From positions 1-64,000 of the IMG/VR virus record IMGVR_UViG_3300023184_000025: a DNA stretch of 64,000 nt; one strand, written 5' to 3'. The notes beneath the pieces were generated by a model that saw only the letters and a program-made list of their open reading frames with translations, was not told where the DNA came from and made no database searches. Both the position numbers and the translations under genes were made by a program. Shown piece after piece: positions 6,620 through 40,766 of the stretch; within the stretch, counting starts at the first letter, position 1; each line of letters starts with the position of its first letter.

Positions 6620-7354
6620 TTATGCTTTTATTAAGGTTACAGTTTTTCTGACTGTGCTTGGACTCACAAGACTAAGCATACTTACAAAAGATTCGTGATC
6701 GTATTCTACAAAAAAGTTTCCATACAAATAACAGTACTCGTCTTTTTTTACCCAATGTGTAAGTGCAGGCCCTAATCTTATTTGCCCTTCGTAGTTTTTT
6801 AAGAAATTAACCAAATAACTTTTTTGTTGTTTGGTTATTTTTCTATCTTTAAAATATAAACGATAAGAATGCTTTGGATTTTTTAATCTAATGGTACCTT
6901 TTGCAAACGCTACATTAATCTGATATACGTGTACATTTTTTATAAACGGTAATTTGGATAATTCTTCTATATATTTTTTATTGTTGGTGTATAGATATCC
7001 ATAGCCGCCTGACTGTATTATTAGTCTTTTGGTATCCGATTCTAACGTATAAAAATTATAGAACGACAATAAATTTTCTTCTACTTCATCACCAATGGGC
7101 AATCCCTCTGATCGGCTGTGCCAGTTTCCTCCCCAATTAACGTGTCTTAGGTGATCTTTGAATTTTTTTCGTTGAGACAAGTTCCAAGAAATCATCTTAC
7201 GATCTTTATCAGGATCATTTTTTAAATTTCTTAGACAAGGTAATTCTTGAAGATAGAAAACAGCCCTATACTCAAATTGATCAAAGTATAGCTGGCTTGA
7301 ATTAACTACTTCAAACTCTGGGTTTGAATTGATCAAGGATAATGTATCCATCAC
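6620..7354 (-). CDS. Hypothetical protein
   Basis: 244-aa ORF downstream of clpA. Confidence 0.6.
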   Translation of the reverse strand: MMDTLSLINSNPEFEVVNSSQLYFDQFEYRAVFYLQELPCLRNLKNDPDKDRKMISWNLSQRKKFKDHLRHVNWGGNWHSRSEGLPIGDEVEENLLSFYNFYTLESDTKRLIIQSGGYGYLYTNNKKYIEELSKLPFIKNVHVYQINVAFAKGTIRLKNPKHSYRLYFKDRKITKQQKSYLVNFLKNYEGQIRLGPALTHWVKKDEYCYLYGNFFVEYDHESFVSMLSLVSPSTVRKTVTLIKA

Positions 7355-9602
7355 TATTAACTGTAGGTTGAGTTGTTTCTTGCACAGGCACGTTTATGTT
7401 TGTTTCAAAGTAAATTTCTCCATCCTTTACAACAACATTTATATTGCAATCAGCAAGACGGTCAAATAAAATTTTTCTACTTAACGGAACACGAATCAGC
7501 TCGTCAATTTTTCTACCCAATGGTCGAGCTCCCATTAATGGATCATATCCACGGTCAGCCAATAGTTCAACTGCTGGCTCTGTTAAAGTTAGTTTAATAT
7601 TTTTATTAACCAAACTAGTTTTTAGTTCATCGACAAATTTGATAACAATTTTCTTAATTGCTAGTTTATCAAGCTTGCCAAATTTACAGACTGCATCCAA
7701 GCGATTTCGTAATTCAGGTTTAAAAAACTCTTTAAAGGCACGATCATCTTCGCCAGTTTTTGCCATGTCTCCAAAGCCAATGTTATTACGTTCACTGTCA
7801 GCACTACCAAGATTACTGGTCATAATAACAATGGTATTTTTACAATCAACTGTTTTTCCGTTGCTACCTGTAATTTTTCCTTCATCAAGCAATTGTAGAA
7901 AGATGTTACTTACATCAGGGTGCGCTTTTTCTACTTCGTCAAATAATAATATCGAAAATGGGTGCTTGCTCAAGTCGCTAATTAATTTGCCACCACCAAG
8001 ATTGCCATCCTCAAACCCAACATAGCCTGGCGGTGCACCAATCAAACTTGATACAGTATGCTTTTCCTGATACTCACTCATGTCGTACTTGAGTAATGTC
8101 ATATCAAGGTATTCAGCCAACATACGTGCCAATTCAGTTTTACCTGTACCAGTTGGCCCCAAGAACAAGAAACTAGACATTGGTTTTCTTGTTGTATTAA
8201 TGCCAGCAAAACTTACATAGATACGATCTAGTACTGTGTCAATGACCTGGTCTTGACCGTATACTCGTTGTTTGATATTACTTTCAAGATCAATAATACG
8301 TGTGCTCTGTTGATTGGCCAAGTGATCCATTGGTACACCGGCAACACGACTGACCTGTTGCATAATTAACTCTTTTGTGACTGTTAATGTACCTGCATCC
8401 TTGACCCTTTCACGAGCACAGGCAGCATCAATTAAATCAATGCTTTTGTCGGGATTCTTTTTGTCATGAATGTAACGACCACTTAGTTCAACTGCTGATA
8501 TAATAGCATCTGTGTCAATCATCACATTGTGAAACTTTTCCAGTCGCGGACTGAGTCCAATAAGAATTTTTTCTGTAGTTTCTTTGTTTGGTTCGTCGAT
8601 ACTGAGTCGATAGAATCTACGCATCAACGCACGATCTTTTTCAAAGCTTTCGTAGTACTCTTCCCAGGTTGTGCTGGCCACAACTTTAAGTACACCTTTG
8701 GTAATTGCTGGCTTGATCATATTAGCAAAATCAAGCTGGCTTTGTCCTGAACTGCCTGCTCCACGCATGGTGTGTGCTTCGTCAATAAACAGCACACAAT
8801 TCTTTTTACTTTCTAATGCATCAATTACCTGTTTGAGTTTTTCTTCAAACTCGCCGCGATACTTTGATCCAGCTAGTAAACTTCCGATTTCCAAACTCCA
8901 CACTTCATGATCTCTAAGGAAACTAGGAACATCATTGTTGACAATTCGCTGTGCCAGGCCTTCAATGATGGCAGTTTTGCCCACACCCGGATCTCCTACC
9001 ATTAGCACGTTGGCTTTAAATCTACGTGCTAACACAGTGACCATTTCTTCAATGTCTTTTTCTCTGCCAATCACTGGTTCAAGTTGATCTTTTTTTGCCT
9101 GATCGGTAATGTTGGTACAATGTTCTTCAAGTATCTCTGTGGCCTGTTGATTGGTGATTTTAACATCGCCGTGTTTGTAATTCTGTTCCCAAAATTTTAC
9201 AAACTCTGCTTTTGTTACACCATATTTGAGCAAGAAGTAATGTGCATGACTATTGTTTTCACTCATAAGAGCAAGATAAAGATCAATGGTGGTAATTACT
9301 CGTCGACCGGTGAACAATACTTGTGTCAGCGCACGATTAAAAATACGTTCTAGTGCATTTGTTTTTCGAGGTTGTATATCTTCTTTACTACTGCGTAAGT
9401 TTGTCAAACTTTCTAGATACGCATTAAGTTCTGACTCAAGCATGTCTATTTCTAAACCAAAATTAATTAATACAGTTCTAAATGGATTGTATTGTAGCAA
9501 CGACAGTAGCAAATGCTCAGTTAACACATACTCGTGTTTTTTGTCTCGAGCAATTCTAACTGCCGCATCAATAATTTGTTCAATTTCGGGATTATTTTGC
9601 AT
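7311..9602 (-). CDS. clpA: ClpA-like Hsp100 AAA+ unfoldase
   Basis: Clp N-domain (EHLLL), two Walker A motifs (GDPGVGKT, GPTGTGKT), LFIDEAH, DMSEYQEKH, LIGAPPGYVG and a ClpP-docking IGF loop; no ClpB coiled-coil M-domain. Confidence 0.92.
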   Translation of the reverse strand: MQNNPEIEQIIDAAVRIARDKKHEYVLTEHLLLSLLQYNPFRTVLINFGLEIDMLESELNAYLESLTNLRSSKEDIQPRKTNALERIFNRALTQVLFTGRRVITTIDLYLALMSENNSHAHYFLLKYGVTKAEFVKFWEQNYKHGDVKITNQQATEILEEHCTNITDQAKKDQLEPVIGREKDIEEMVTVLARRFKANVLMVGDPGVGKTAIIEGLAQRIVNNDVPSFLRDHEVWSLEIGSLLAGSKYRGEFEEKLKQVIDALESKKNCVLFIDEAHTMRGAGSSGQSQLDFANMIKPAITKGVLKVVASTTWEEYYESFEKDRALMRRFYRLSIDEPNKETTEKILIGLSPRLEKFHNVMIDTDAIISAVELSGRYIHDKKNPDKSIDLIDAACARERVKDAGTLTVTKELIMQQVSRVAGVPMDHLANQQSTRIIDLESNIKQRVYGQDQVIDTVLDRIYVSFAGINTTRKPMSSFLFLGPTGTGKTELARMLAEYLDMTLLKYDMSEYQEKHTVSSLIGAPPGYVGFEDGNLGGGKLISDLSKHPFSILLFDEVEKAHPDVSNIFLQLLDEGKITGSNGKTVDCKNTIVIMTSNLGSADSERNNIGFGDMAKTGEDDRAFKEFFKPELRNRLDAVCKFGKLDKLAIKKIVIKFVDELKTSLVNKNIKLTLTEPAVELLADRGYDPLMGARPLGRKIDELIRVPLSRKILFDRLADCNINVVVKDGEIYFETNINVPVQETTQPTVNSDGYIILDQFKPRV

Positions 9603-9678
9603 AGGTTTCCTATTAGGTACTGCGATAATTCTTTAATTATAAACTCAATATGTTAAAAACACAAGCAGTACGGTTAAA

Positions 9679-10470
9679 TTATTTATTTGACTGATCTTTA
9701 AGGATATCTATTATTTCATCTGGAATATGGTCGGGCATGACTGCATTTAATTTAATCATGATATCTCCTGTTGTTCCATTGTTTGAACGCAGACCTAGTC
9801 CTCGTAATCTCAATGTGGTGTTTGGATTAGTCATCGGAGGAACAGTCACTGACATTTCTCTACCTCTAAGGTCTTGTACTACTGCGTCAGTACCGATAAT
9901 TAATTCCCAAAAAGATGCATTGTGTTTGGCATAAAGATCATTGCCTTGTCTTGACCAAATTGGGTGTGGATGGATTCTAAACTGCACAACAAGATCGGAG
10001 TTACCCGGTCCGATACCCGGATAACGTATGTTAGATCCGTCTTCAACGCCTTCGGGTATGTGTATTTCAATTGCTGACGTGCCTAAATTTGATGTCACTG
10101 CTACAGTTCTTGCGCCACCAGTGACTACGTCGTCGAGCTTGATCCATAATGTCATACGTTGAAACGACTGTCTCGGTTGATTAACATTCATCCTAGCGCC
10201 AAACATATTAAAAATAGCATCCATATCAAATGGGTCCTGGCCGGCACCCGGACCACTAGATCTAAAATTAAAATTAGTCTGTGGAGTATCGTATTGTGCT
10301 CGTTTTTCTGGATCACTTAGTGTTCTGTATGCTTCTTCTACTTCTTGAAACTTTTTTGTATCACCACCCTTATCTGGATGGTGCTGGCTGGCCAGCTTAC
10401 GATAAGCTTTTTTAATTTCATCAGCGGCAGCAGTTTTGGGCACACCTAATGTGGCATAGTGATCTGTCAT
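9679..10470 (-). CDS. DnaJ class B (CbpA-like) co-chaperone
   Basis: J-domain with HPD motif, G/F-rich region and DnaJ C-terminal domain; no zinc finger. Confidence 0.9.
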   Translation of the reverse strand: MTDHYATLGVPKTAAADEIKKAYRKLASQHHPDKGGDTKKFQEVEEAYRTLSDPEKRAQYDTPQTNFNFRSSGPGAGQDPFDMDAIFNMFGARMNVNQPRQSFQRMTLWIKLDDVVTGGARTVAVTSNLGTSAIEIHIPEGVEDGSNIRYPGIGPGNSDLVVQFRIHPHPIWSRQGNDLYAKHNASFWELIIGTDAVVQDLRGREMSVTVPPMTNPNTTLRLRGLGLRSNNGTTGDIMIKLNAVMPDHIPDEIIDILKDQSNK

Positions 10471-10518
10471 AAAAAATCCTGTACAGTTAATTATACAGGA
10501 TTGTTAGCCAAGTGTTAA
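10471..10518 (-). promoter_or_regulatory. Terminator-like hairpin overlapping a sigma70-type promoter upstream of the dnaJ-like gene
   Basis: AATCCTGTA-N10-TACAGGATT followed by a T-run on the minus strand; TTAACA (10518-10513)-N17-TATAAT (10495-10490). Confidence 0.55.
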
Positions 10519-10521
10519 TAA

Positions 10522-10731
10522 TTATTTCTTGCCATCTGGGACTTTTTCACCTTCAAATTTCTTGTGTACTTTGATTTTTTTACAAGTTTGTTTTGGTGTT
10601 CCGTCGGCCTTTTTGATCACATTGCCCTTGGCGTCCTTGACGTCTGTGCAAACTTGTTTTTCTTCTCCACCAGCTACTGATGGGCCGGATAATACCAAAC
10701 ATAGACCTGCTACAAATATAACATTTTTCAT
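10522..10731 (-). CDS. Small secreted basic protein (2 Cys)
   Basis: Likely start MKNVIFVAGLCLVLS (signal peptide) at 10731 rather than 10839. Confidence 0.6.
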   Translation of the reverse strand: MKNVIFVAGLCLVLSGPSVAGGEEKQVCTDVKDAKGNVIKKADGTPKQTCKKIKVHKKFEGEKVPDGKK

Positions 10732-10868: not shown

Positions 10869-11459
10869 TTAAATTTCTGGGTTAACCTGAGGCGGCGGTG
10901 CTTTCTTTCCACCAAACCCAATGGTAATTGGCGCTGGATTACTGGCAGTCACTGCTGGTGAGCCAAAGTCGCTGCCAAATCCTGCTGGCGCTGGGGGTAC
11001 TGCTCCAAATCCAGGTGCTGAACTTCCGAACCCACCACCAATGGGTGCGGTGCCCCAGGACTGTGTGACTGTTGTTGCTGTTGGTGCACCAAATGCACCG
11101 GGTCCGGACTGTTGTACTGCGCCCGGCGTTTGATATGTTGTTCCGACATTTGGTGGTAAGTTGATTCCGCCATTATTTGCTCCTGCTAATTTTTCTTGTG
11201 TACGACCGTATGCAGCCAGACCAAGTACAGCACCCATACTAATGTGAAATAGTCCTGCGCCTTGTAGCGTCAACGGTTGCCATTGGACATTTACTCCGCC
11301 ATGAAATAATGCTTGTGTCAGACTCCATAATACTGGAGCAATCACAAAGTCAAATATGCACACGCCCATGTACATCCATCCCATCATAGGGCGCCACTTT
11401 GAGTTCATCCAGTCTTCTTTTTTCTTTTCTGACTCGCTTATTTTTTCTGACATTGTCAA
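10869..11459 (-). CDS. Holin-like protein (GTA 3TM holin family) with Gly/Pro-rich tail
   Basis: WRPMMGWMY motif, hydrophobic helices and GLAAYGRTQEK; lies in the lysis cassette. Confidence 0.7.
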   Translation of the reverse strand: MTMSEKISESEKKKEDWMNSKWRPMMGWMYMGVCIFDFVIAPVLWSLTQALFHGGVNVQWQPLTLQGAGLFHISMGAVLGLAAYGRTQEKLAGANNGGINLPPNVGTTYQTPGAVQQSGPGAFGAPTATTVTQSWGTAPIGGGFGSSAPGFGAVPPAPAGFGSDFGSPAVTASNPAPITIGFGGKKAPPPQVNPEI

Positions 11460-11471
11460 CTCCGTTTTATA

Positions 11472-12416
11472 TTAATTTGGATTAGCAAAATAAATGGTAG
11501 CACCCTGTGGCTGTACAGCACGGGCATTGCCATCAGGGAATACTGTTTTAAATTGTGCTACTTGTGCCACTGACAACTGGATGGGTTGTCTAAACAGTAC
11601 CCAAGAAACAATTTGTGGATATGCTTGTTGAGTCAATTGACGCTGTGGATTGCCCCACCATGGACGACTGTTGGCAGGGTTAGTGGTGGCAACACAGGTG
11701 CTATTGGCACCCAGCGTACCAATTGAAATTGGTGCAGTTAATCCGCCACTGTATCTATAACTTGGTGCTGTGTTGAAGTTGGCCATGCCCATCATTGATG
11801 CAATGTTGAAACTGACAGTCTGACCAGAATTTGCACCGCTGGCGTTGGCAGCCGGAATTGCATTAAACACACTGGCCCAGGCAGCATTTGGTGTATTACC
11901 ATTGCCCACCATGCGTTGACCTAATACCAACAAACTGTCAGAGTTACACAATCCATAAGGACCAGTAAAATCTGCCAATTTGAAATAAACAAAGTGTACT
12001 TCTAAATCAGTAACTGAATTATTAATCCAATGCTCTGCTGGTCCATGAAAGTGAAACTCTAGCAAGCAGTATTGAGCACCCCCAAATACAATACCAGGAG
12101 CACATGAACCTGCATTGGGATTGTTGAGTTTGTAGGTACCCCAACGTGTGTTGGCAATAGGATATGCGTTTGCACCAGCAGATGCTGTGGGTAAAGTACA
12201 CACATCACCTGCGCCACTGTTGCAAAATGCGGAATTTAGTGTGTTTTGAGTTGCAAAAGTAAATGTGGCATTTAACCCACTGTAACTGGTAAACTGGGCT
12301 GGGCTACCTTGTGGAGTAGTTGCTGTGATGTTTACTGGTGTTTGGCTCTGAGAATTGACCTGCAATGAAGTTAATCCAAGAATAAAAATTGTAGTTAATA
12401 TTCTAATATATTTCAT
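11472..12416 (-). CDS. Secreted alpha-carbonic anhydrase-like protein
   Basis: Signal peptide; EFHFH..AEH and LEVHFV (three Zn-binding His); YRYSGGLTAP, VSWVLFRQPIQLS and NARAVQP motifs. Confidence 0.82.
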   Translation of the reverse strand: MKYIRILTTIFILGLTSLQVNSQSQTPVNITATTPQGSPAQFTSYSGLNATFTFATQNTLNSAFCNSGAGDVCTLPTASAGANAYPIANTRWGTYKLNNPNAGSCAPGIVFGGAQYCLLEFHFHGPAEHWINNSVTDLEVHFVYFKLADFTGPYGLCNSDSLLVLGQRMVGNGNTPNAAWASVFNAIPAANASGANSGQTVSFNIASMMGMANFNTAPSYRYSGGLTAPISIGTLGANSTCVATTNPANSRPWWGNPQRQLTQQAYPQIVSWVLFRQPIQLSVAQVAQFKTVFPDGNARAVQPQGATIYFANPN

Positions 12417-12417
12417 T

Positions 12418-13029
12418 TTATTTTCCTTTTGTTTTGTATTCTGCTTTGTCTTGCGCCTTAATTGGAAGACTCACAGGATATTTAGCACATGCATCAGGAT
12501 CACCCTGACCGGCTTCGGTCAAAAATGATGTTGCTGGTGGTACTTGACCTGTAGGACATGAACATACTGCTATACCGTCAGCACCTTTGACACAATTCCA
12601 ACTAAAACAGTTGCTTGATTGTGCGCCAAGATTTAAACTAGCATCACACTTTTGTACTGTGGCCTTTTGTTTCCAAGGCAATGGGCTAAAGTTGTTGGCT
12701 TCCTGTGGATAAAAGATTTTAGGTGCAAACAAACTCCAGACATGATTGCTATCTGTTGCGGCACAGCTTCCCTTCATATTACCAGCACTAGTATCAGCAA
12801 TAGAAACACCATTAAGAATAGGACAACGACATTCTACTTCAGGGTAAGGTACGCCATTGTTACCAGTGATCATTTTTGATGTTCCATCTTTGTTCAGGAC
12901 TGGTTTACAAGTACTTGCGGCACATAGTGCATATTCTCCTGTACAAGTCGTAATGCCAGCTGGAGATGGTTGAGCAAATACCGAGGTTGATAGCATTAAG
13001 AATGCCAGGATTGTTAATAGTTTTTTCAT
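12418..13029 (-). CDS. Secreted Cys-rich protein
   Basis: Signal peptide (…SVFA|Q) and about 12 Cys in the mature part. Confidence 0.7.
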   Translation of the reverse strand: MKKLLTILAFLMLSTSVFAQPSPAGITTCTGEYALCAASTCKPVLNKDGTSKMITGNNGVPYPEVECRCPILNGVSIADTSAGNMKGSCAATDSNHVWSLFAPKIFYPQEANNFSPLPWKQKATVQKCDASLNLGAQSSNCFSWNCVKGADGIAVCSCPTGQVPPATSFLTEAGQGDPDACAKYPVSLPIKAQDKAEYKTKGK

Positions 13030-13039
13030 TTGTTTCCTT

Positions 13040-13228
13040 TTATACTAATTTCATTGCTATGTTGCAAGCTTGCACAACATAGCGGAATAATTCTTCGTTG
13101 CCAGCGCATTCTTGAGCGGCACGAATGTCACGTATCTCGGTAAGAAGATAATTGTGTTCATCTTCTGAGATGTTGCCCATCTGGCATTGTTCAACAATGG
13201 CCTGAATTTCTTGTTCTAGTGTGTGCAT
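13040..13228 (-). CDS. Small hypothetical protein
   Basis: 62-aa ORF coupled to the upstream lipoprotein gene. Confidence 0.55.
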   Translation of the reverse strand: MHTLEQEIQAIVEQCQMGNISEDEHNYLLTEIRDIRAAQECAGNEELFRYVVQACNIAMKLV

Positions 13229-13581
13229 TATCTTCCTTGCCAGGCCAGCTTGGCAGCCTGTATACGTTGTGCGGCAGTTTTTTTTCCTAATTCGCAGAAC
13301 ATTTTACTACCGCCTTGACTCATACGCTCTGTATGTGTTTGTAGACCTTTTAAGTTTGGAGCCTGTGGATCTCCACGCCAGTCACTAAAACGTGCTAGAC
13401 GAGTTGCTAGATCAACCGCCTTTGACCAGTCTGGTAACTCACAATTAATACGCTCGACAGCAATATCTGTGTCAACTAATGCACCAAACATTTCAGGATC
13501 GTGTTCTCTGGGCCAGTACTCTTTGATAGTACTGCATCCTGTTAATGTAACAATTGCAACTAGTAATAAAACACGCTTCAT
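13228..13581 (-). CDS. Lipoprotein
   Basis: Start MKRVLLLVAIVTLTG|C (lipobox) at 13581. Confidence 0.7.
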   Translation of the reverse strand: MKRVLLLVAIVTLTGCSTIKEYWPREHDPEMFGALVDTDIAVERINCELPDWSKAVDLATRLARFSDWRGDPQAPNLKGLQTHTERMSQGGSKMFCELGKKTAAQRIQAAKLAWQGR

Positions 13582-13841
13582 TTTATGTCCTCGTATATTT
13601 TCTTCTGCACATGATACCATTCAATCCACATGTCAACCTTTACAGCACATTCGTAATAGGTTCCATAGTTTTCAGCTATAGTTTTAGACACATCACTGAG
13701 CACAGGATCTTCTTTTAACTTTTTTAAATTAGGGCAACGTTCTAGTGTATTTTTGCCCGGTGTGTTGGGAAAACTAGGAACAACAGGCACAGACGTACAA
13801 GCCGACAAGAACATAACTAGTGAGATAATAATATATTTCAT
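13578..13841 (-). CDS. Outer-membrane spanin (Rz1-like lipoprotein)
   Basis: Lipobox LSA|C, Pro-rich, C...Y.EC pattern; follows the i-spanin gene. Confidence 0.72.
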   Translation of the reverse strand: MKYIIISLVMFLSACTSVPVVPSFPNTPGKNTLERCPNLKKLKEDPVLSDVSKTIAENYGTYYECAVKVDMWIEWYHVQKKIYEDIK

Positions 13842-14299
13842 TTCTTGGGTACCTCTGCTGAATCATTATGTGCTCGAATAAATTCTGTTGGTATTTCGCA
13901 CTGGCCTCCTGGCATAAATTTAGTATCGTATTTTATAATCTCTTTGTCTATGTAACGTGTGACATATTCGGTGCGTCCTTTAATATATCTAACTTTGTCT
14001 TCACCTTTTTTGGCCAATGCTTCGTTGGCTTTGTTGGATTCTTGTTCTGCTTTTGCTACCTGTGCCTGCGCTTCATCAACCTTGGCACGCCAGGCCATTT
14101 CAGTGTCATATCCGCCACGTAACCATACGCCCAACAATAGAATAACAACACCAGTTGGTTTTAATATATGTGCATAGCTTCCATAAAATGGAATAAATTT
14201 ACCTAACCAACCTAACACAATGCTGATTACGCCAACTGCAATAATTGTCCAGTACACCCAGTTTAGCATTGCATCAGGTATGAGGTTTAGTATCCACAT
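13838..14299 (-). CDS. Inner-membrane spanin (Rz-like)
   Basis: N-terminal TM helices, coiled coil and C-terminal Cys; directly follows the endolysin. Confidence 0.72.
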   Translation of the reverse strand: MWILNLIPDAMLNWVYWTIIAVGVISIVLGWLGKFIPFYGSYAHILKPTGVVILLLGVWLRGGYDTEMAWRAKVDEAQAQVAKAEQESNKANEALAKKGEDKVRYIKGRTEYVTRYIDKEIIKYDTKFMPGGQCEIPTEFIRAHNDSAEVPKK

Positions 14300-14300
14300 A

Positions 14301-14936
14301 TCAATCTCCTAATATGTGCAGAGCATGATTGTAGTGTTTAATACGATCGTCTAAGCCAATGGTACCACCGTTGATGCGTTTGGTGGCAGTGAGCACATCA
14401 CCTTTGTCGGCCCACTGATTTAGATTGTTGGTTTCCCAAAACCAACAGGCTGATTGTACAGCACCTTCAAAGGTTGCTAGATATTCAGGCACATCCTCTA
14501 CAGCGGTTTCAATGCTCATGGCAAAATTTTCATAGTTGGACTTGCCAGTTAACTGAATTAGTCCCCGGCCACAATAACGATAACCATCTCCGGATTCTTC
14601 TGGACCGTTGCCCATTCTATTAGCATATATTCTATTGGCAATTGCTTCTTGTTTGTTGGGCAAACTGGCATATTGAGTGGCCATTGCATCATTGGGGAAA
14701 TATTTTGGAAATATCTTGCGTAAACTTGCTGCCTTGTAATTTAAATTTTCTTTAATGGCTCGAAAACCTCCAGATTCGTGTGCGCATTGTGCAATAAACA
14801 TTGCCACACGAGATTTAGTATTGATGTCGTAATCGGGTAATATTTCTGCCACTGCTTCGTACCAATGATCAATATAGGGATTACCAGGAACCATTTGATT
14901 TAATTGTTGCTGTGTAAATTCAAAGTCAAAACTCAT
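14301..14936 (-). CDS. Glycoside hydrolase family 19 endolysin
   Basis: FIAQCAHESGGF, ENLNY, YCGRGLIQLTG..NY and TKRINGG motifs. Confidence 0.92.
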   Translation of the reverse strand: MSFDFEFTQQQLNQMVPGNPYIDHWYEAVAEILPDYDINTKSRVAMFIAQCAHESGGFRAIKENLNYKAASLRKIFPKYFPNDAMATQYASLPNKQEAIANRIYANRMGNGPEESGDGYRYCGRGLIQLTGKSNYENFAMSIETAVEDVPEYLATFEGAVQSACWFWETNNLNQWADKGDVLTATKRINGGTIGLDDRIKHYNHALHILGD

Positions 14937-14993
14937 AATATTGTCCTATTTGAAAAGTATTTATGGAATTCAGAATTTTATAAGTATATTATA

Positions 14994-16127
14994 ATGAATG
15001 TTTTGATTCTCACTCCCGACCGTGTTGGCAGTACTCTACTACAACGATTAATCACTGTTTACATGAATGCACACGCATTTGATCAGCCTGTGATTAATTT
15101 ACATGAATTAACCAACGGCATTATGAAGTATTATAGCCCTACATTCAATCAAGAAGTGCTGGGCAAGTTTGAAGACCGACAAAAATGGGGGTATTATCAA
15201 ACTCTTGAAGAAATCACAGAACTTCTTGGCTCAGTTGAACATTATAAAACCACAAGACTAGCACATTATCATATTAAAAAACGACAGGACACTATTGCTA
15301 GTCAAGTTCCTTTTTACGAATACCTAAATCAAAATTTCTACATCATCAGTGCCCAACGAGACAATTTGTTTGAGCATGGACTCAGTTGGTGTATATCAAA
15401 CGAGTCAAAGAAATTAAATGTGTTTAGCCATCAAGAAAAAGTTGATGCATTTTCTAACATTTATAAAAATAAAATCAACGTTGATCCATTGGCGCTGATA
15501 AAATACCTTGACCAGTATGTTGAGTATCTGGCCTGGGTAGACAATCACTTTGACGTTAACTCGTATTTTAAATACGACAAAGATATGTCAAGACTTGAAG
15601 AGTACATACTTGGGCTGTCTATCTTTAGCCAGCAACCAAACAAAAGGTCCTGGAAAGACATCTTTGAACTAGAGTTTGCTGACTGGAACAAGTGTCATTA
15701 CCTAATCAGCGATCTAAGCGGAATCAGCACACAACTACCATCTGTTGACCATCCAAAGTTGACCTATGACGGAAAAGAATCCAACTTTGATAATGTGCAA
15801 CTACAAAGCCTGGCAAGAACAGAGATACCAAAGTCTTTGTCTGTGGTCGATCAACGGTTCTTAATAAAAAATGGCCCAGGGTATCAAAAAGCACACAATG
15901 CTATCAACCAGCTGGTAGAAAACAAAGTACTAGTTACGCCTGTGCCAATAAAACTGCAAACAATGCTGGAAAAGAAGTTATTAATTAATAATTTTTCTCA
16001 GTGTGTTGATGTGTATAACAAATGGTCAGAGTCAACAGGCATGGGTATTCAGTACTCTGATGAAGATATTGAGTTGTCAATAAAAGAAGAAATCAAAACC
16101 TGGCATGCTACTGCTTTGTTAAAGTAA
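14994..16127 (+). CDS. Sulfotransferase-like protein
   Basis: Likely start MNVLIL at 14994; TPDRVGSTLL resembles the 5'-PSB loop; R.NLFE..LSW resembles Stf0-type proteins. Confidence 0.5.
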   Translation: MNVLILTPDRVGSTLLQRLITVYMNAHAFDQPVINLHELTNGIMKYYSPTFNQEVLGKFEDRQKWGYYQTLEEITELLGSVEHYKTTRLAHYHIKKRQDTIASQVPFYEYLNQNFYIISAQRDNLFEHGLSWCISNESKKLNVFSHQEKVDAFSNIYKNKINVDPLALIKYLDQYVEYLAWVDNHFDVNSYFKYDKDMSRLEEYILGLSIFSQQPNKRSWKDIFELEFADWNKCHYLISDLSGISTQLPSVDHPKLTYDGKESNFDNVQLQSLARTEIPKSLSVVDQRFLIKNGPGYQKAHNAINQLVENKVLVTPVPIKLQTMLEKKLLINNFSQCVDVYNKWSESTGMGIQYSDEDIELSIKEEIKTWHATALLK

Positions 16128-37106: not shown

Positions 37107-40100
37107 TTAACTGATTGCGATCCAACCGTAACGCACAGTTTGAGCACTACCGCTGGTGTTATTGATACCAAAGTCAAATCTATTGGTTGTTGCACTTGGC
37201 GCGGTATTACTGCGAACTATGGCATTTGCTGTACCTACAAACTGATTGGGTATGCTGGTAAAGTCAATGGGTGTGCCGCCGCCGTTGTAGACCCAGGCAT
37301 ACTGATAACCCACAACAGGCACATTGGTATTAGTAACAGTAGCCGTGGCGTTCCAAACCAAGATACCATTGGGAATATTGCAATCAACCCACATTTGATA
37401 GGTCTCGTTGATACCCACAGTGAAACTTTGAGTGCTGTTGCCTGTAGGCACAGTCCAAGTGCTTGAAAACCTTGTGACCGCATCCACTGGTGTGTTGTTG
37501 GCATAGTTTACGGCAAATGTGTTGCCGGGCAAAGTCAAGTTGCCGGTGTTGTTAAATGTCCAATTGTATGAACCGGCTACTAGGGTCACATTGGCGCTGG
37601 TTCCTTGAACATTGCCTGTGATACTAATATTACCAATCAAGTTGCCGGCTGTGATGTTGCCTGTAGTACTAATAGTATTGCTACCATATGCAGCCAAGAA
37701 TGTGGCCACATTGGCATTGCCGTAACTTGCGGCTATACCAGTTAGTTGTGATCCGTTACCAATAAAAAAGTTACCAGAAACATTGGCGGTTGTTGTAATA
37801 TTACCAGTTGAGCTGATTGGATTTGAGCCAAGTGCAGCCAAGTTGGCTACCACATTAGCATTGCCATATGTGGCTGGTAATCCAGTAAGTTGACTGCCGT
37901 TACCAATAAAGTAGTTGCCAGTGACGTTGCCTGTGGCCGAGATCAAACCATTTGTTAATATGTTACCACCAGTGATGTTGCCAGAGGAGGGCTCAACAGT
38001 GGCATAGTTTACATACTTTATGACGCCATCATAGGTCATTATACTCATGGCACCGTTGGAGGTGATATCTTGTGTGACTACAGGAGCCGGCAAGTTAGTC
38101 AATTCACTGCCGTTGCCTTTAATGTAAGCACCGGTGACATTGCCTGTAGCACTGATGTTGCCAGGCGCTGCCAAGTTACCACTAGCACCAAACACCCAAG
38201 TGTTGCCACCGGTTTCAATATTGACATGGCCTTCGTTGGCTTGACCATTGCCTGAAGCACCGCCCCAGATATTGACATTGCCACCGGTTGCGGTACCATA
38301 CCCACCGTATATTTTTACATCGCCACCTATGGTGTTACCTTGACCGCCGGTTACATTAACATATCCACCCACAGTATTACTGTAACCGCCGGTGATATCA
38401 ATATAACCTGGGTTGCCACCGGTAGTGGCTGCATCGCCTGCTTCCATACGAATGTATCCGCCTGAACCACCTGCACCACCTACTGTGTTTGCACCACCTT
38501 GACCACCACGAATTTTAATGTCTCCGCCTGAACCACTAGCATTGCCACCACGTCCGGCCCATAAGTAGATGTCACCACCTTCACCACCTTGATAACCTTC
38601 GCCTGGATTAATTACTAGTCGCTGACTACTATCACCATTAATACCGAGTACACCATCCGGTGTTGAAATGATTGCTTCTTGTGTGGCATTGCCAAACAAT
38701 AATGTTTGGCCGCTAATTGTGCCACTTGGATTGTCACCGCGCTGTGTAGTTAATGTTGGGAATATGGTTTCACCAGCCGCACCAAATGTCCAGTTGGACT
38801 CTACAAAGTTGTTGTTGCCTTGATTGCCCAGTACATTATATTGGGTCAGTCTAAATGTTGCCGCACCATTGCCAGCAGTCATGGTGATCACATCACCGTC
38901 CTGATAGTTTCCATCACCTGGATTGATAACTGAAGCATTGACCACCTGACCACTTAGGCCATAACCATACGCCACTGTGAGTCCTGTACCCGAACCGCCA
39001 GTGGTGGCTGAAAAACTGCCACCACCACCATAACCACTGCCACCGGTCAGTATGGTGCAGATGTTGAATTGTCCACCGGCTGTTAAGGTCAATCCTTCTA
39101 GGTTGACTACCCTGCCAGTGGTGTCAAATGTCCACTGCGCTGAGTTGCCCACATTATCATTGCTGTTGATCACAACATTGCCGGTGTTGGCCAGCTTGAC
39201 ATACAAGTTATCGTTGCCCAGGAACAGTTCAGTGTTGTACAAGTTACCCGAGGTCAAGTGCAAGTGATTGGCATCAGCGGTAGGATCAGCCGTTGGATAA
39301 ATCAACAACTGTTGATCAGTACTGGTTCCGCCCTGTGGTGTTAAGGCAATGGTATTGCCAGACAATACACCTCCAGGAATATTGGTTTCATAAACTATGC
39401 CACCCCGTGGTAGAGTTAAATTACCGTCGTATTCAAACGTCCAAGTATAAGGGGTTCCCGCATCAGATTGTATAGAAACCTTGCCATCAACATTGACAGC
39501 GACATTGGCACCTGTATCACGGCCAATGATGACATTTTCACCGTTGCCGGCAATATGAATGTCTGGGCCTGCACCACCCGTTAAGAAGATATCTAAATAA
39601 GCACTGGCATTAGCAGGATCTGGCTGTAAACGCAAGTTACCATCACCAATGATGTTGACGTCATCAAAGGTCACATTGCCGGTGTCGGCAGTTGAGATGC
39701 CAGTGAGTTGACTACCGTTGCCAAGGAAATAATCCGCAGTGACGTTGCCTCGAGTCTCTATGTCCCCGATCACATTGAGTCCGTCTTGGATGGTCACAAA
39801 CGAACTGTCATCACTGCTGATGTTATTGGTAATGATAGTGGATGCAGTAACGGTACCATCTGTGCTGATTACCAAAGGAATAGTACTTGCTGTTCTGTTC
39901 CGGACACTGAAGTCGTTGCTGCCATTGCCTAGGATACCAAAGTCCCATTGTTGGGTTGCATTTGCTTGGTCCTGAACTGACATGTAAGCACTACGGGGTG
40001 TGTTGTAGTTGTCATCATAGCCAACCACTGTTATACCCGGTCCGGCAACGATATCAAAATCTGTACTTTCCACTCTTGGTGTGTTGACTGTCACATAAGA

Positions 40101-40766
40101 CGTGTAGTCAACTCTTGGTTGATAAGCTGTGGTGCCGTTGACGTTCAATAAACCATCACTGTCAAATTGCATAGTGCTATAGGTATCGCCCGGTGTGCCG
40201 CCTTGGTTACTAAACCCCTCCAGCCAGTTTATCTGTACTGCTCCGTTGTTTCCAGTAGGAACTCCATACGGACTACCATTGGCATAGAAATAGTCATCTG
40301 TATAAATTGCCCCGGCTCGTAGTACATTGTCAATGGCATCAACCATTATGGTGCTGTCATCTGCAAACACACTACCTTTTAAATCCCCAACAAAAACGTT
40401 GCTGGTGTAACTGATATTTCCTGCTGACAAGTTTCCTGTAATTGTCACGTTGCCGTCAATGTTTAGGCCGGTAAAATAACCTGTACGATATCGTAGATTT
40501 GCGCTGCCAATGTCATACACCTGTGACACACCAGGGCGAACATGATTTCTAGTAGAAATTACACCTGTGCCGTTGGTGGCCAACTCTAAATTACCGTTGG
40601 TATTGGTAACTTGTATGGTGTTGTTGAGTATGGTAATGTTTGAGCCAACAGGACCGGTGGCCCAGATTTGGTCAAAATTATTGTCGGTTTTTATGAATGC
40701 TACACGTAACGGATCACCTGTGCCGTCGTTGGGTGCGGCTCCGTAATTGATAATTTCTTGGGACAT
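37107..40766 (-). CDS. Long tail fibre / adhesin
   Basis: gp9/10-like N-terminus (PNDGTGDPLR.AF.K..NNF); repeats GNGSQLTG, YGNANV, WTF..G and Gly-rich GG.v.I.GG. Confidence 0.82.
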   Translation of the reverse strand: MSQEIINYGAAPNDGTGDPLRVAFIKTDNNFDQIWATGPVGSNITILNNTIQVTNTNGNLELATNGTGVISTRNHVRPGVSQVYDIGSANLRYRTGYFTGLNIDGNVTITGNLSAGNISYTSNVFVGDLKGSVFADDSTIMVDAIDNVLRAGAIYTDDYFYANGSPYGVPTGNNGAVQINWLEGFSNQGGTPGDTYSTMQFDSDGLLNVNGTTAYQPRVDYTSYVTVNTPRVESTDFDIVAGPGITVVGYDDNYNTPRSAYMSVQDQANATQQWDFGILGNGSNDFSVRNRTASTIPLVISTDGTVTASTIITNNISSDDSSFVTIQDGLNVIGDIETRGNVTADYFLGNGSQLTGISTADTGNVTFDDVNIIGDGNLRLQPDPANASAYLDIFLTGGAGPDIHIAGNGENVIIGRDTGANVAVNVDGKVSIQSDAGTPYTWTFEYDGNLTLPRGGIVYETNIPGGVLSGNTIALTPQGGTSTDQQLLIYPTADPTADANHLHLTSGNLYNTELFLGNDNLYVKLANTGNVVINSNDNVGNSAQWTFDTTGRVVNLEGLTLTAGGQFNICTILTGGSGYGGGGSFSATTGGSGTGLTVAYGYGLSGQVVNASVINPGDGNYQDGDVITMTAGNGAATFRLTQYNVLGNQGNNNFVESNWTFGAAGETIFPTLTTQRGDNPSGTISGQTLLFGNATQEAIISTPDGVLGINGDSSQRLVINPGEGYQGGEGGDIYLWAGRGGNASGSGGDIKIRGGQGGANTVGGAGGSGGYIRMEAGDAATTGGNPGYIDITGGYSNTVGGYVNVTGGQGNTIGGDVKIYGGYGTATGGNVNIWGGASGNGQANEGHVNIETGGNTWVFGASGNLAAPGNISATGNVTGAYIKGNGSELTNLPAPVVTQDITSNGAMSIMTYDGVIKYVNYATVEPSSGNITGGNILTNGLISATGNVTGNYFIGNGSQLTGLPATYGNANVVANLAALGSNPISSTGNITTTANVSGNFFIGNGSQLTGIAASYGNANVATFLAAYGSNTISTTGNITAGNLIGNISITGNVQGTSANVTLVAGSYNWTFNNTGNLTLPGNTFAVNYANNTPVDAVTRFSSTWTVPTGNSTQSFTVGINETYQMWVDCNIPNGILVWNATATVTNTNVPVVGYQYAWVYNGGGTPIDFTSIPNQFVGTANAIVRSNTAPSATTNRFDFGINNTSGSAQTVRYGWIAIS

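What the first reader, a model, noticed from the sequence alone, without database searches (positions are those of the whole stretch)
11472..13029. Secreted alpha-carbonic anhydrase and Cys-rich secreted protein inside the lysis cassette
Between the spanin/lipoprotein genes and the holin is a signal-peptide protein retaining the alpha-CA zinc triad (HFH, E.H), the Glu of the EH motif and the gatekeeper Thr (GGLTAP vs canonical GSLTTP). It lacks an obvious proton-shuttle His. It is coupled to a disulfide-rich secreted protein. Alpha-CA is an unexpected phage gene. It could alter periplasmic pH or bicarbonate supply late in infection, or be a repurposed binding fold as in poxvirus D8.
Basis: partly seen in the sequence, partly recalled or inferred. 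Interest (0 to 1): 0.7.

Follow-up and report, generated by a model that had tools for sequence, protein, structure and literature searches.

The report
Secreted carbonic anhydrase in phage lysis operon
A ~345-kb freshwater jumbo phage carries an intact, export-signalled alpha-type carbonic anhydrase as an optional extra gene wedged directly in front of its holin; the enzyme family is ordinary, but this type has not been described in phages and its benefit to the phage is unknown.

Summary
ORF 11472-12416 (-) is a genuine alpha-carbonic anhydrase (CA). It scores 57.9 bits on Pfam PF00194, against a cut-off of 27. The AlphaFold model has pLDDT 90.8, and its best fold matches are bacterial alpha-CAs. 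The three zinc histidines (H122, H124, H141), E128, E139, T227 and the CO2-pocket residues are invariant across 23 relatives, and dN/dS is about 0.14. A signal peptide is present and there is no proton-shuttle His.

The gene sits in a tightly packed lysis cluster: endolysin, spanins, lipoprotein, Cys-rich protein, CA, holin. Independent lake metagenomes span its junctions, so it is not a chimera.

The proposed CA/Cys-rich pair is not supported. The closest relative (ClpA 97% identical) keeps the Cys-rich gene but lacks exactly the CA gene, a 981-bp indel. CA-bearing relatives lack the Cys-rich gene.

CA is a sporadic accessory gene, found in 3 of 54 syntenic lysis loci. It forms one phage clade, sister to bacterial (Acidobacteriota-like) alpha-CAs, and has been exchanged among related phages. 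It nearly always lands beside holin, endolysin, spanin or structural genes.

The best reading is an active periplasmic CO2/bicarbonate/proton equilibrating enzyme co-expressed with the lysis genes. Its physiological payoff is inferred, not shown. It is a new member of a known kind, of moderate interest.

The parts
11472..12416 (-). Alpha-carbonic anhydrase gene, 314 aa. The predicted mature protein starts at Q23.
   Evidence: PF00194 at 57.9 bits against a cut-off of 27. AF2 pLDDT 90.8. Foldseek against PDB gives alpha-CAs at E about 1e-13. 60 homologous clusters, all carrying PF00194. dN/dS 0.08-0.19.
12351..12416 (-). Sec-type signal peptide, residues 1-22. It has a basic N-region, a hydrophobic core, and V-N-S then Q23 (A-x-A then Q in relatives).
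   Evidence: Read from the sequence. The family alignment shows a variable hydrophobic leader ending in A-x-A-Q, followed by invariant Q23 and the T-P-x-N motif. No dedicated signal-peptide predictor was available.
11985..12065 (-). Catalytic core, residues 118-144: L-E-F-H122-F-H124 ... E128-H129 ... E139-V-H141-F-V143. It holds the zinc triad, the Glu106 and Glu117 equivalents and the Val121 equivalent.
   Evidence: Invariant columns in A1 and A3. Aligned to the FHFH...SEH...E-x-H-x-V motifs of solved bacterial alpha-CAs.
11730..11756 (-). Residues 221-229, R-Y-S-G-G-L-T227-A-P: the gatekeeper Thr199 loop, with Leu198 equivalent L226.
   Evidence: Invariant in the family. Paired with YRYSGSLTTP of 4c3t by a profile search.
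11616..11729 (-). Insertion of about 35-38 residues (230-267) between the Thr199 loop and the V-x-W272 strand. It contains invariant C241.
   Evidence: 38 residues here against 3 in 4c3t. A shorter version is shared with the bacterial sister group. pLDDT 85-92 in the model.
11458..12438 (-). 981-bp segment with no counterpart in the closest relative L029. It comprises the last 7 codons of the Cys-rich gene (which differ), the whole CA ORF and its spacer, and marks the boundaries of the CA indel.
   Evidence: blastn of the window against L029. Homology runs 13672-12439 (81%), resumes at 11457 and continues to 7002 (87%). In L029 the Cys-rich stop is 10 nt from the holin start.
12418..13029 (-). 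Secreted Cys-rich protein, 203 aa, with 12 invariant Cys. It is a virus-only family of unknown function. Its stop lies 1 nt before the CA start, and the CA's AAGGA ribosome-binding site lies inside its last codons.
   Evidence: More than 260 homologous clusters with no Pfam match. 12 invariant Cys. All Atlas hits are viral. Junction sequence. AF2 model poor, pLDDT 54.6.
10869..11453 (-). Holin, 194 aa from the ATG at 11453. Basic N-terminus, two hydrophobic helices, then a long Gly/Ala/Pro-rich tail. It starts 18 nt after the CA stop.
   Evidence: PF11351 GTA_holin_3TM at 1.3e-7 and phrog_3427 holin at 7e-9. Junction sequence.
14301..14936 (-). GH19-type endolysin, the first gene of the packed cluster.
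   Evidence: phrog_181 endolysin at 4.4e-77; PF00182 at 3.5e-8.
13578..14299 (-). Spanin pair. The i-spanin-like membrane protein is 13838-14299. The o-spanin-like lipoprotein is 13578-13841, with lipobox L-S-A-C.
   Evidence: phrog_2536 and phrog_1327 (weak) for the first. phrog_456 Rz-like spanin at 6.9e-6 and PF23793 LysC at 8e-4 for the second.
13040..13581 (-). A second lipoprotein (13228-13581, 117 aa, lipobox L-T-G-C) and a 62-aa ORF (13040-13228). With the Cys-rich gene they are lineage-specific insertions between the o-spanin and the holin.
   Evidence: Found only in L028-L031 among 80 relatives. LPAM_1 weak match. No family in NCBIfam or PADLOC.
10475..10731 (-). Small secreted Lys-rich protein (10522-10731, 69 aa), followed by the only terminator-like hairpin on this strand (10475-10502). 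This is the probable 3' end of the lysis transcription unit, just before DnaJ.
   Evidence: The small protein is conserved between the holin and DnaJ in most relatives. Terminator-like stem plus T-run (pattern match only).

Best explanation
**What is shown**
- The gene encodes a catalytically intact alpha-class carbonic anhydrase with an N-terminal Sec-type signal peptide and six conserved cysteines. It is therefore built for the oxidising periplasm of a Gram-negative host.
- It is an optional accessory gene, not a lysis component. It is a gene-sized indel relative to the nearest relative, and it is rare among syntenic loci.
- It belongs to a single phage clade whose nearest relatives are bacterial alpha-CAs, and it has been exchanged between related jumbo phages.
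- It has no room for its own promoter or terminator. There is 1 nt upstream and 18 nt downstream, so it must be expressed from the transcript that carries the endolysin, spanins and holin.

**What is inferred**
- The enzyme is made together with the lysis proteins and exported.
- In the periplasm it speeds the otherwise slow reaction CO2 + H2O <-> HCO3- + H+. Respiratory CO2 leaving the infected cell is then trapped as bicarbonate plus protons. This buffers or acidifies the periplasm and retains inorganic carbon, as cellular periplasmic alpha-CAs do.
- I think the payoff is to keep the envelope energised and supplied until the holin fires. That would be useful only under some water chemistries or in some hosts, which fits the patchy distribution.
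- Lacking a His64-type shuttle, turnover probably depends on buffer or on another residue.
For: **Identity**
- Pfam 57.9 bits. AF2 pLDDT 90.8, pTM 0.88. Top PDB folds are all alpha-CAs, with TM about 0.7 on the target. Profile against PDB gives 5e-14.

**Active site and selection**
- H122, H124, H141, E128, E139, T227, V143, V164, L226, W272 and R299 are invariant or nearly so.
- dN/dS is 0.08-0.19, median 0.14 over 82 pairs.

**Export**
- Every family member has a hydrophobic leader ending A-x-A then Q.
- Six conserved Cys.

**Accessory status**
- L029 has ClpA 97% and endolysin 96% identical, but lacks exactly the CA ORF.
- CA is present in 3 of the 54 relatives that show both endolysin and holin.
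- CA and ClpA identities are incongruent: L009 is 90% for CA and 68% for ClpA, L006 is 66% and 77%.
- Phage CAs are monophyletic (100/100) and sister (99/86) to a bacterial group that includes Terracidiphilus proteins, one of them on a 2.5-Mb contig.

**Linkage to late genes**
- CA lies within one or two genes of holin, endolysin or spanins in at least 12 of 17 IMG/VR loci, although gene order differs. Other copies sit next to capsid or fibre genes.

**Operon structure**
- Junction sequences. The only terminator-like site lies after the small secreted gene.

**Possible expression**
- Three lake metatranscriptomes from three studies contain pieces of the CA gene with zero differences. Two of them have contigs bridging the CA stop and the holin start.

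**Precedent**
- The periplasmic alpha-CA Caa of Ralstonia eutropha converts CO2 to bicarbonate for cell metabolism (PMC3904209).
Against: - No activity, zinc content, export or timing has been measured.
- There is no proton-shuttle His, Q92 is replaced by E120 and T200 by A228, so the rate could be low.
- RNA-library contigs may come from contaminating DNA, and the runs were selected on this gene.
- The host is unknown. A proteobacterial host is suggested only by distant similarity to PA5oct-, Phosso- and Atu_ph07-type jumbo phages.
- The CA-bearing genomes encode no SulP-type bicarbonate transporter and no PurE. This gives no phage-side partner for a carbon-supply role.
- Most relatives lyse without CA, so any benefit is conditional.
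- Linkage to lysis genes could simply reflect one ancestral insertion into a recombination hot spot.
Confidence: 0.6

Rival explanations
1. Biosynthetic auxiliary metabolic gene. The periplasmic CA exists to raise the bicarbonate supply for host carboxylations (carbamoyl phosphate, purine ring, anaplerosis) that feed replication of a ~345-kb genome. Its position in the lysis cluster is incidental.
For: - Periplasmic Caa of R. eutropha is needed for growth, and the paper ties it to bicarbonate supply for amino-acid and nucleotide synthesis.
- The active site is intact and under purifying selection.
- The patchy distribution is typical of metabolic accessory genes.
Against: - The gene is embedded among late-type genes (lysis, capsid, fibre) in nearly every context, not among nucleotide-metabolism genes.
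- No phage-encoded bicarbonate transporter or PurE was found in three CA-bearing genomes.
- Periplasmic bicarbonate still needs a host transporter to enter the cell.
Confidence: 0.25
2. Lysis-timing modulator. By controlling periplasmic proton and bicarbonate levels, the CA alters the proton-motive force that holds the holin in check, or the pH seen by the endolysin. This tunes when or how efficiently lysis happens.
For: - CA remains adjacent to the holin through at least six different gene orders.
- It is translationally close-coupled, with 18 nt to the holin start.
- RNA-library contigs bridge the CA-holin junction.
- It is established that holin triggering responds to loss of membrane energisation (own knowledge, lambda and T4 systems).
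Against: - 51 of 54 related lysis loci work without it.
- Some copies sit by capsid genes or alone.
- The holin appears to have only a short periplasmic loop (sequence), so direct contact is unlikely.
- No precedent is known to me or was found in the library.
Confidence: 0.12
3. CA and the Cys-rich protein form a two-gene secreted cassette that acts together.
For: In this phage the two ORFs are 1 nt apart, and the CA ribosome-binding site lies inside the Cys-rich gene. Both carry signal peptides.
Against: - L029-L031 have the Cys-rich gene (87% identical) in the same place without CA.
- The complete CA-bearing genomes G001 and G002 have no Cys-rich homologue.
- None of the other 16 CA loci has it within 8 kb.
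- In other phages the Cys-rich gene lies near ferritin and DNA polymerase B.
- The Cys-rich family has more than 260 clusters against 60 for CA.
Confidence: 0.04
4. A catalytically dead CA fold reused as a binding or exclusion protein, like poxvirus D8/OPG105.
For: Poxvirus OPG105 proteins are the nearest viral fold matches, at E about 1e-9. There is no His64. A large insertion lies next to the active-site loop.
Against: All three zinc ligands, both Glu residues, the gatekeeper Thr and the hydrophobic pocket are invariant over sequences down to 44% identity, with dN/dS about 0.14. Identity to OPG105 is only 12-16%.
Confidence: 0.04
5. Assembly chimera, or host DNA mis-joined into a phage contig.
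For: The nearest cellular homologues are bacterial. GC rises slightly over 11-12 kb, to 0.46 against about 0.41.
Against: - A 6,661-nt contig with zero differences spans 11403-15500 in run X2. Pieces from X3 tile the region.
- A 2025 run from another study (X5) crosses the CA/Cys-rich junction.
- The same locus is present in a 345,154-bp contig.
- 17 distinct viral contigs carry the gene among phage genes.
- A scan of 185,579 species genomes found no close relative.
Confidence: 0.01

Closest known systems
Bacterial periplasmic alpha-carbonic anhydrases (for example N. gonorrhoeae CA 1kop/1koq, Thermovibrio 4c3t, Sulfurihydrogenibium 4g7a, H. pylori 4ygf, R. eutropha Caa)
   Same: Same Pfam family and fold, signal peptide, zinc His triad, Glu106/Thr199 network and hydrophobic CO2 pocket. 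A periplasmic role in CO2/bicarbonate conversion is documented for Caa.
   Different: - Only about 17-20% identity over the fold alignment.
- An insertion of about 35 residues after the Thr199 loop.
- An extended, partly low-confidence segment at residues 60-90.
- Three probable disulfides rather than one (the single disulfide of bacterial alpha-CAs is own knowledge; six conserved Cys here).
- No His64. E replaces Q92 and A replaces T200.
- Encoded by a phage, inside a lysis cluster.
Unnamed bacterial alpha-CA subgroup that includes Terracidiphilus sp. (Acidobacteriota) 'carbonic anhydrase family protein' (P0188, P0189)
   Same: Sister group in the tree, 99/86. It shares the E-F-H-F-H motif, G-S-L-T-A-P and a Cys-containing insertion after it, and has a similar length of about 290-305 aa.
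   Different: Only 29-36% identity. The insertion is shorter. One member is chromosomal, on a 2.5-Mb contig, rather than phage-borne.
Phage and viral carbonic anhydrases reported from viromes (Metania sponge virome preprint, 10.64898/2026.01.21.700432; Nitrosospira phage roc1, 10.64898/2026.05.02.722434)
   Same: A CA carried by a bacterial virus and interpreted as an auxiliary gene acquired from bacteria.
   Different: The preprint states that the beta class was the only one found in its vOTUs and in other phages, and that the alpha class occurred only in MAGs and the sponge. The gene here is alpha-class, secreted, and linked to lysis genes.
Poxvirus cell-surface-binding protein D8/OPG105
   Same: A virus-encoded protein with the alpha-CA fold. 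These are the nearest hits in the viral structure library.
   Different: It belongs to a eukaryotic virus and shares 12-16% identity. It is known as a non-enzymatic attachment protein (own knowledge). The phage protein keeps the full catalytic set.
Morons and accessory genes embedded next to phage lysis cassettes (for example stx or bor beside the lambdoid S-R-Rz genes; own knowledge)
   Same: A gene-sized insertion, absent from the closest relative, riding on late or lysis transcription and encoding an exported protein.
   Different: No separate promoter or terminator is evident. The cargo is a housekeeping-type metalloenzyme rather than a toxin or surface protein. The host phage is probably lytic and a jumbo phage.

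Membership tests
Alpha-carbonic anhydrase (Pfam PF00194, EC 4.2.1.1) | Sequence match to the family model above its curated threshold | tested here: met
   57.9 bits against a cut-off of 27, E = 1.6e-15. All 60 homologous clusters carry PF00194.
Alpha-carbonic anhydrase (Pfam PF00194, EC 4.2.1.1) | Alpha-CA fold (central twisted beta-sheet) | tested here: met
   AF2 pLDDT 90.8. The 50 best PDB matches listed are all alpha-CAs, E about 1e-13, TM 0.62-0.73 normalised to the target.
Alpha-carbonic anhydrase (Pfam PF00194, EC 4.2.1.1) | Three zinc-binding histidines (His94, His96, His119 in human CA II numbering) | tested here: met
   H122, H124 and H141 are invariant in 23 phage sequences and in the 71-sequence alignment. 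They align to the FHFH and E-x-H motifs of solved enzymes.
Alpha-carbonic anhydrase (Pfam PF00194, EC 4.2.1.1) | Glu106-Thr199 gatekeeper pair and Glu117 | tested here: met
   E128, T227 and E139 are invariant in the phage family. The T227 loop pairs with YRYSGSLTTP of 4c3t.
Alpha-carbonic anhydrase (Pfam PF00194, EC 4.2.1.1) | Hydrophobic CO2 pocket (Val121, Val143, Leu198, Trp209) | tested here: met
   V143, V164, L226 and W272 are invariant or at least 90% conserved. The assignment is by motif alignment, not by inspecting coordinates.
Alpha-carbonic anhydrase (Pfam PF00194, EC 4.2.1.1) | His64-type proton shuttle (marks the fast isozymes; not required for membership) | tested here: not met
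   The aligned position is L60 and is variable. The protein has only four His, all accounted for.
Alpha-carbonic anhydrase (Pfam PF00194, EC 4.2.1.1) | Bound zinc and measurable CO2 hydration | not testable with these tools
   Needs purified protein.
Core phage lysis proteins (holin, antiholin, endolysin, spanin) | Present throughout the lysis cassettes of related phages | tested here: not met
   CA is present in only 3 of the 54 related loci that show both endolysin and holin. It is absent from the closest relative.
Core phage lysis proteins (holin, antiholin, endolysin, spanin) | Homology to a known lysis protein family | tested here: not met
   No PHROG match at all. The only Pfam match is Carb_anhydrase.
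Moron or accessory gene of cellular origin | Gene-sized presence/absence difference between otherwise collinear close relatives | tested here: met
   The 981-bp segment 11458-12438 has no counterpart in L029, whose flanks are 81-92% identical at the DNA level.
Moron or accessory gene of cellular origin | Own promoter and terminator | tested here: not met
   The spacers are 1 nt and 18 nt. No terminator-like site occurs until 10475-10502. The gene is operon-embedded.
Moron or accessory gene of cellular origin | Nested among or sister to cellular homologues | tested here: met
   The phage clade (100/100) is sister (99/86) to a bacterial group. The tree is rooted only at its midpoint, so the direction of transfer is inferred.
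Poxvirus D8/OPG105-like non-catalytic CA fold | Loss of catalytic or zinc-binding residues | tested here: not met
   All of them are retained and invariant.

The most novel reading that the evidence does not exclude
The periplasmic carbonic anhydrase is a conditional lysis-control factor. By catalysing CO2/bicarbonate/proton equilibration in the periplasm, it sets the local pH and the proton-motive force seen by the holin, and so couples the timing or completeness of lysis to the inorganic-carbon chemistry of the lake water. That would be a new kind of environmental input to phage lysis.
Probability: 0.12. Interest if true: 0.8.

Novelty: new member of a known kind. Interest (0 to 1): 0.5.

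Why it matters
- **New for phages.** Alpha-CAs are textbook enzymes, and virus-borne CAs have been noticed in viromes. A secreted alpha-class CA clade that circulates among freshwater jumbo phages and keeps landing beside the holin has not been described in the literature I could search.
- **What activity would mean.** If the enzyme is active, phages manipulate periplasmic inorganic carbon or pH during the last phase of infection. That is a compartment and a time point for which I know of no described auxiliary metabolic gene.
- **A natural experiment exists.** Two roughly 345-kb phages (the one in this window and the L029 contig) differ at this locus by exactly this gene. They form a ready CA-plus/CA-minus pair.
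- **An enzymology question.** The protein is a compact, disulfide-rich alpha-CA without a histidine shuttle and with a new insertion at the active-site rim.

Tried and rejected
**Searches that found nothing**
- Megablast of the locus and tblastn of the CA against 50,697 phage records: no match.
- Scan of 185,579 species genomes with CA family patterns: no close relative, so no host clue.
- NCBIfam and PADLOC on the CA, the Cys-rich protein, the lipoprotein, the 62-aa ORF and the small secreted protein (the holin in NCBIfam only): nothing.
- SulP (PF00916) and PurE (PF00731) in three CA-bearing genomes: none.
- tRNA scan of the window: none.

**Searches that were uninformative**
- The Pfam Gp23 search of the phage's own genome was uninformative because the control genomes were also silent. 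A capsid protein from L005 also found nothing in the 76%-complete record.

**Weak results**
- AF2 on the Cys-rich protein gave pLDDT 54.6, so no fold search was run on it. The Atlas returned only virus-only, unnamed clusters.
- A single-sequence phmmer run had aligned L-T-Q-Q-A-Y with the LTTPPC motif. I rejected this in favour of GGLTAP after the 71-sequence alignment and the profile search.

**Not attempted, or rejected**
- No complex prediction was run, because I do not claim that CA binds any neighbour.
- Rejected ideas:
  - a CA/Cys-rich cassette
  - a D8-like pseudoenzyme
  - a chimera
  - a cyanobacterial carbon-concentrating-mechanism target (nothing points to a cyanobacterial host; spanins, and a porin gene in a relative, indicate a Gram-negative host, and the nearest cultured phages infect Proteobacteria)
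Full report
**Where the window lies.** The window is bases 137947-201946 of a 262,308-bp IMG/VR virus record that CheckV rates 76% complete. The same locus occurs at 100% identity in a 345,154-bp contig. Relatives reach 346,856 bp with terminal repeats. This is therefore a freshwater jumbo phage of about 345 kb. Every sequencing run that holds the locus is a lake or freshwater metagenome. The nearest cultured phages are distant:
- PA5oct-like Pseudomonas phages, with clamp loader 54% and ClpA 40% identical.
- Sinorhizobium phage Phosso and Agrobacterium phage Atu_ph07.

The host is not identified. Spanins that include a lipoprotein, and a porin gene in one relative, point to a Gram-negative host, probably a proteobacterium. 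This is an inference.

**The observation.** All the genes listed here lie on the minus strand and are almost contiguous:
- GH19 endolysin, 14301-14936 (phrog_181, 4e-77)
- i-spanin-like protein, 13838-14299
- o-spanin-like lipoprotein, 13578-13841
- a second lipoprotein, 13228-13581
- a 62-aa ORF, 13040-13228
- the Cys-rich secreted protein, 12418-13029
- the carbonic anhydrase (CA), 11472-12416
- the holin, 10869-11453 (PF11351, phrog_3427)
- a small secreted Lys-rich protein, 10522-10731
- DnaJ and ClpA homologues downstream

The Cys-rich stop codon is 1 nt from the CA start codon, and an AAGGA ribosome-binding site lies inside the last Cys-rich codons. The CA stop is 18 nt from the holin ATG. 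The only terminator-like hairpin on this strand follows the small secreted gene, at 10475-10502 (a pattern match only). The layout reads as a single transcription unit.

**Is it an alpha-CA?** Yes.
- *Sequence.* Pfam Carb_anhydrase scores 57.9 bits against a curated cut-off of 27. A profile of the phage family hits solved bacterial alpha-CAs at 5e-14.
- *Fold.* An AlphaFold2 model built on a 71-sequence alignment has mean pLDDT 90.8 and pTM 0.88. Its 50 best listed matches in the PDB are all alpha-CAs, led by the Neisseria gonorrhoeae enzyme (E about 1e-13, TM 0.71 normalised to the target).
- *Catalytic residues.* In 23 family members 48-88% identical to the window protein, several positions are invariant. 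In human CA II numbering these are:
  - H122, H124 and H141, the zinc triad (His94, His96, His119)
  - E128-H129 (Glu106-His107)
  - E139 (Glu117)
  - V143 (Val121)
  - L226-T227 (Leu198-Thr199)
  - W272 (Trp209)
  - R299 (Arg246)
  - V164 (Val143) is nearly invariant.

  The numbering correspondences rest on the well-known alpha-CA motifs and on the alignments.
The profile search pairs YRYSGGLTAP with YRYSGSLTTP of 4c3t. There are then 38 residues before the V-x-W strand, where 4c3t has 3. This insertion of about 35 residues contains the invariant C241.
- *The missing shuttle.* No proton-shuttle histidine exists. The protein has four His in total, and the position aligned with His64 is a variable Leu. 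Q92 is replaced by an invariant Glu (E120) and T200 by Ala.
- *Selection.* Pairwise dN/dS against 14 orthologues is 0.08-0.19, with a median of 0.14 over 82 pairs. The gene is under strong purifying selection.
- *Export.* Every orthologue begins with a variable hydrophobic leader that ends A-x-A before an invariant Gln (V-N-S then Q23 here). Six Cys are conserved. Both features suit export to an oxidising periplasm. I had no dedicated signal-peptide predictor.

**Not an artefact.**
- A 6,661-nt contig from run X2 covers 11403-15500 with no differences.
- Contigs from X3 tile the region.
- A 2025 run from a different study (X5) crosses the CA/Cys-rich junction with no differences.
- Seventeen distinct IMG/VR contigs carry orthologues among phage genes.

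**The supposed pairing with the Cys-rich protein.** The pairing does not hold. The Cys-rich protein belongs to a large family:
- It has more than 260 clusters at 90% identity, all viral, with 12 invariant Cys and no Pfam, PHROG, NCBIfam or PADLOC family.
- No other CA locus has it within 8 kb.
- The complete CA-bearing genome G001 (346,856 bp) and the 95%-complete G002 have no homologue at all.
- In three other large phage contigs it follows a large ORF close to a ferritin gene; two of those loci also show DNA polymerase B. None shows a CA gene or, apart from an endolysin fragment 7 kb upstream in one, any lysis gene.
- Its AlphaFold model was poor (pLDDT 54.6), so its fold and function remain unknown.

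**CA is an optional, mobile gene.** I anchored on ClpA, which has 356 relatives in IMG/VR, and kept the best 80. The conserved backbone is endolysin, i-spanin, o-spanin, holin, small secreted protein, DnaJ, ClpA.
- CA is present in only 3 of the 54 loci that show both endolysin and holin.
- The closest relatives are L029-L031, one of them on a 341,990-bp contig. Their ClpA is 97%, endolysin 96% and DnaJ 90% identical. They carry the lipoprotein, the 62-aa ORF and the Cys-rich gene in the same order, but no CA.
- At the DNA level, homology runs up to window position 12439 and resumes at 11457. In L029 the Cys-rich stop lies 10 nt from the holin start. The CA ORF is therefore a clean indel of about 980 bp.
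- Between the same two phages the spanin genes have been swapped for divergent alleles (37% and 48% protein identity) inside flanks that are 92% and 81% identical at the DNA level. This region is a recombination hot spot.
- CA identity and backbone identity are incongruent. L009 has CA 90% but ClpA 68% identical; L006 has CA 66% but ClpA 77%. This indicates exchange of the gene among co-occurring phages.

**Origin.** A profile search of 1.84 billion representative proteins found 4,044 relatives. The phage family collapses into very few representatives there. The next best full-length hits are proteins of about 290-305 aa. Two of them are annotated as carbonic anhydrase family proteins of Terracidiphilus sp., one on a 2.5-Mb contig. 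In a maximum-likelihood tree of 71 sequences, the phage sequences are monophyletic (100/100) and sister (99/86) to this bacterial group. The bacterial group shares the E-F-H-F-H motif, G-S-L-T-A-P, and a shorter Cys-containing insertion. The root is only a midpoint. A single capture from bacteria is therefore the simplest reading, but it is not proven.

**Where the gene lands.** Gene order changes between phages, yet CA stays next to late-type genes. The arrangements seen are:
- Cys-rich, CA, holin (this phage)
- endolysin, CA, DUF4337-like protein, holin
- holin, CA, DnaJ
- holin, fibre-like protein, CA
- o-spanin, fibre-like protein, CA, holin
- endolysin, fibre-like protein, CA, spanins
- in a few contigs, major capsid protein, fibre-like protein, CA
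- baseplate-like genes, CA, a 1,079-aa fibre-like protein
- in two contigs, CA alone, in opposite orientation to its neighbours

A fibre-like protein of 245-290 aa sits directly upstream in eight loci. It has no signal peptide. It is homologous to a domain of the window ORF 37107-40766, and language-model leads point to tail-fibre families.

**Expression hints.** Three lake metatranscriptome runs from three different studies contain short contigs identical to parts of the CA gene. In two of them (X20 and X25) a contig of 151-167 nt bridges the CA stop and the holin start. These runs were selected with this gene, and DNA carry-over cannot be excluded. This is suggestive only.

**Mechanism.**
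- *Shown:* an intact alpha-CA active site, an export leader, purifying selection, operon embedding, and accessory status.
- *Inferred:* the enzyme is exported late in infection together with the lysis machinery. There it accelerates CO2 + H2O <-> HCO3- + H+ in the periplasm. The documented precedent is Caa of Ralstonia eutropha, a periplasmic alpha-CA proposed to convert diffusing CO2 into bicarbonate for metabolism (PMC3904209).

I rank the possible payoffs in this order:
1. General periplasmic pH and inorganic-carbon homeostasis that keeps the cell productive until the holin fires.
2. Bicarbonate supply for biosynthesis. This is weakened by the late-gene contexts and by the absence of a phage bicarbonate transporter or PurE.
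3. Direct tuning of lysis timing through the proton-motive force. This is attractive because of the persistent holin linkage, but 51 of 54 relatives lyse without the gene.

A non-catalytic, D8-like role is unlikely given the invariant catalytic residues.

**Novelty.**
- The phage gene-family library (PHROGs) has no model that matches the protein.
- No record in a 50,697-genome phage collection encodes a detectable homologue.
- In the viral structure library, only poxvirus and giant-virus proteins share the fold.
- The one paper in the searchable library that discusses viral carbonic anhydrases reports the beta class as the only class in its vOTUs and in other phages.
- JGI's automatic annotation already labels several orthologues 'carbonic anhydrase'.

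This is a new, phage-specific branch of a very well-known enzyme family. It has an unusual genomic habit and an unknown physiological role.

Noticed in passing
window 10869-13841, compared with L029, L009 and L006: The interval between the o-spanin and the holin is an insertion hot spot for genes of exported or membrane proteins. In this lineage it holds a lipoprotein, a 62-aa ORF, the Cys-rich protein and CA. In L009 and L006 it holds a DUF4337 membrane protein. In others it holds a fibre-like protein.
   Followed up: partly
window 13672-14305, against L029 5265-5922: The i-spanin and o-spanin genes have no DNA-level similarity to those of the closest relative (37% and 48% protein identity), although the flanks are 92% and 81% identical. 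This looks like an allelic replacement of the spanin pair.
   Followed up: partly
L003 7112-7978, L005 7233-7970, L006 7195-7980; window 39810-40274 inside ORF 37107-40766: A 245-290-aa protein without a signal peptide lies directly upstream of CA in eight loci. It is 65% identical over residues 63-217 to a domain of the window's 1,219-aa ORF. Language-model leads point to tail-fibre families (Mtd_N, PTL_trimer). Why a short fibre-like gene travels with CA is unexplained.
   Followed up: partly
window 10522-10731: A small secreted Lys-rich protein (69 aa after its probable start) is conserved between the holin and DnaJ in most of the 80 relatives. It has no family match. It is a candidate lysis accessory or regulator.
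   Followed up: no
window 7311-10470: A DnaJ (Hsp40) and ClpA/ClpB-type AAA+ chaperone pair lies immediately downstream of the lysis cluster. ClpA has 356 relatives in IMG/VR.
   Followed up: partly
window 10869-11160: The C-terminal half of the holin is a Gly/Ala/Pro-rich low-complexity tail of about 100 residues. It varies strongly between relatives: the holin is 69% identical in a phage whose ClpA is 97% identical.
   Followed up: no
window 12995-14305 (run X3): One low-depth metagenome contig joins 12995 to 14305, skipping 1,309 bp. This suggests a co-occurring variant in which the Cys-rich gene directly follows the endolysin, without the spanin, lipoprotein and 62-aa genes in between.
   Followed up: no
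L003/L004 1-4761: A CA-bearing relative (171,681-bp contig) encodes a Gram-negative porin homologue (Porin_4/Porin_1, 387 aa) and a 1,302-aa Laminin_G_3 protein a few genes from its lysis cluster.
   Followed up: no
P0185 and P0344: The phage CA profile scores highly on 1,690-aa proteins of the green algae Pseudoscourfieldia marina and Pycnococcus provasolii. HMMER matches these in 12 separate stretches, suggesting tandem alpha-CA domains.
   Followed up: no
L025 1305-1745, L026 3734-4174, L027 12285-12728: In other jumbo-phage contigs the Cys-rich gene lies a few genes from a phage-encoded ferritin gene, and directly after a large ORF of 338-715 aa.
   Followed up: no
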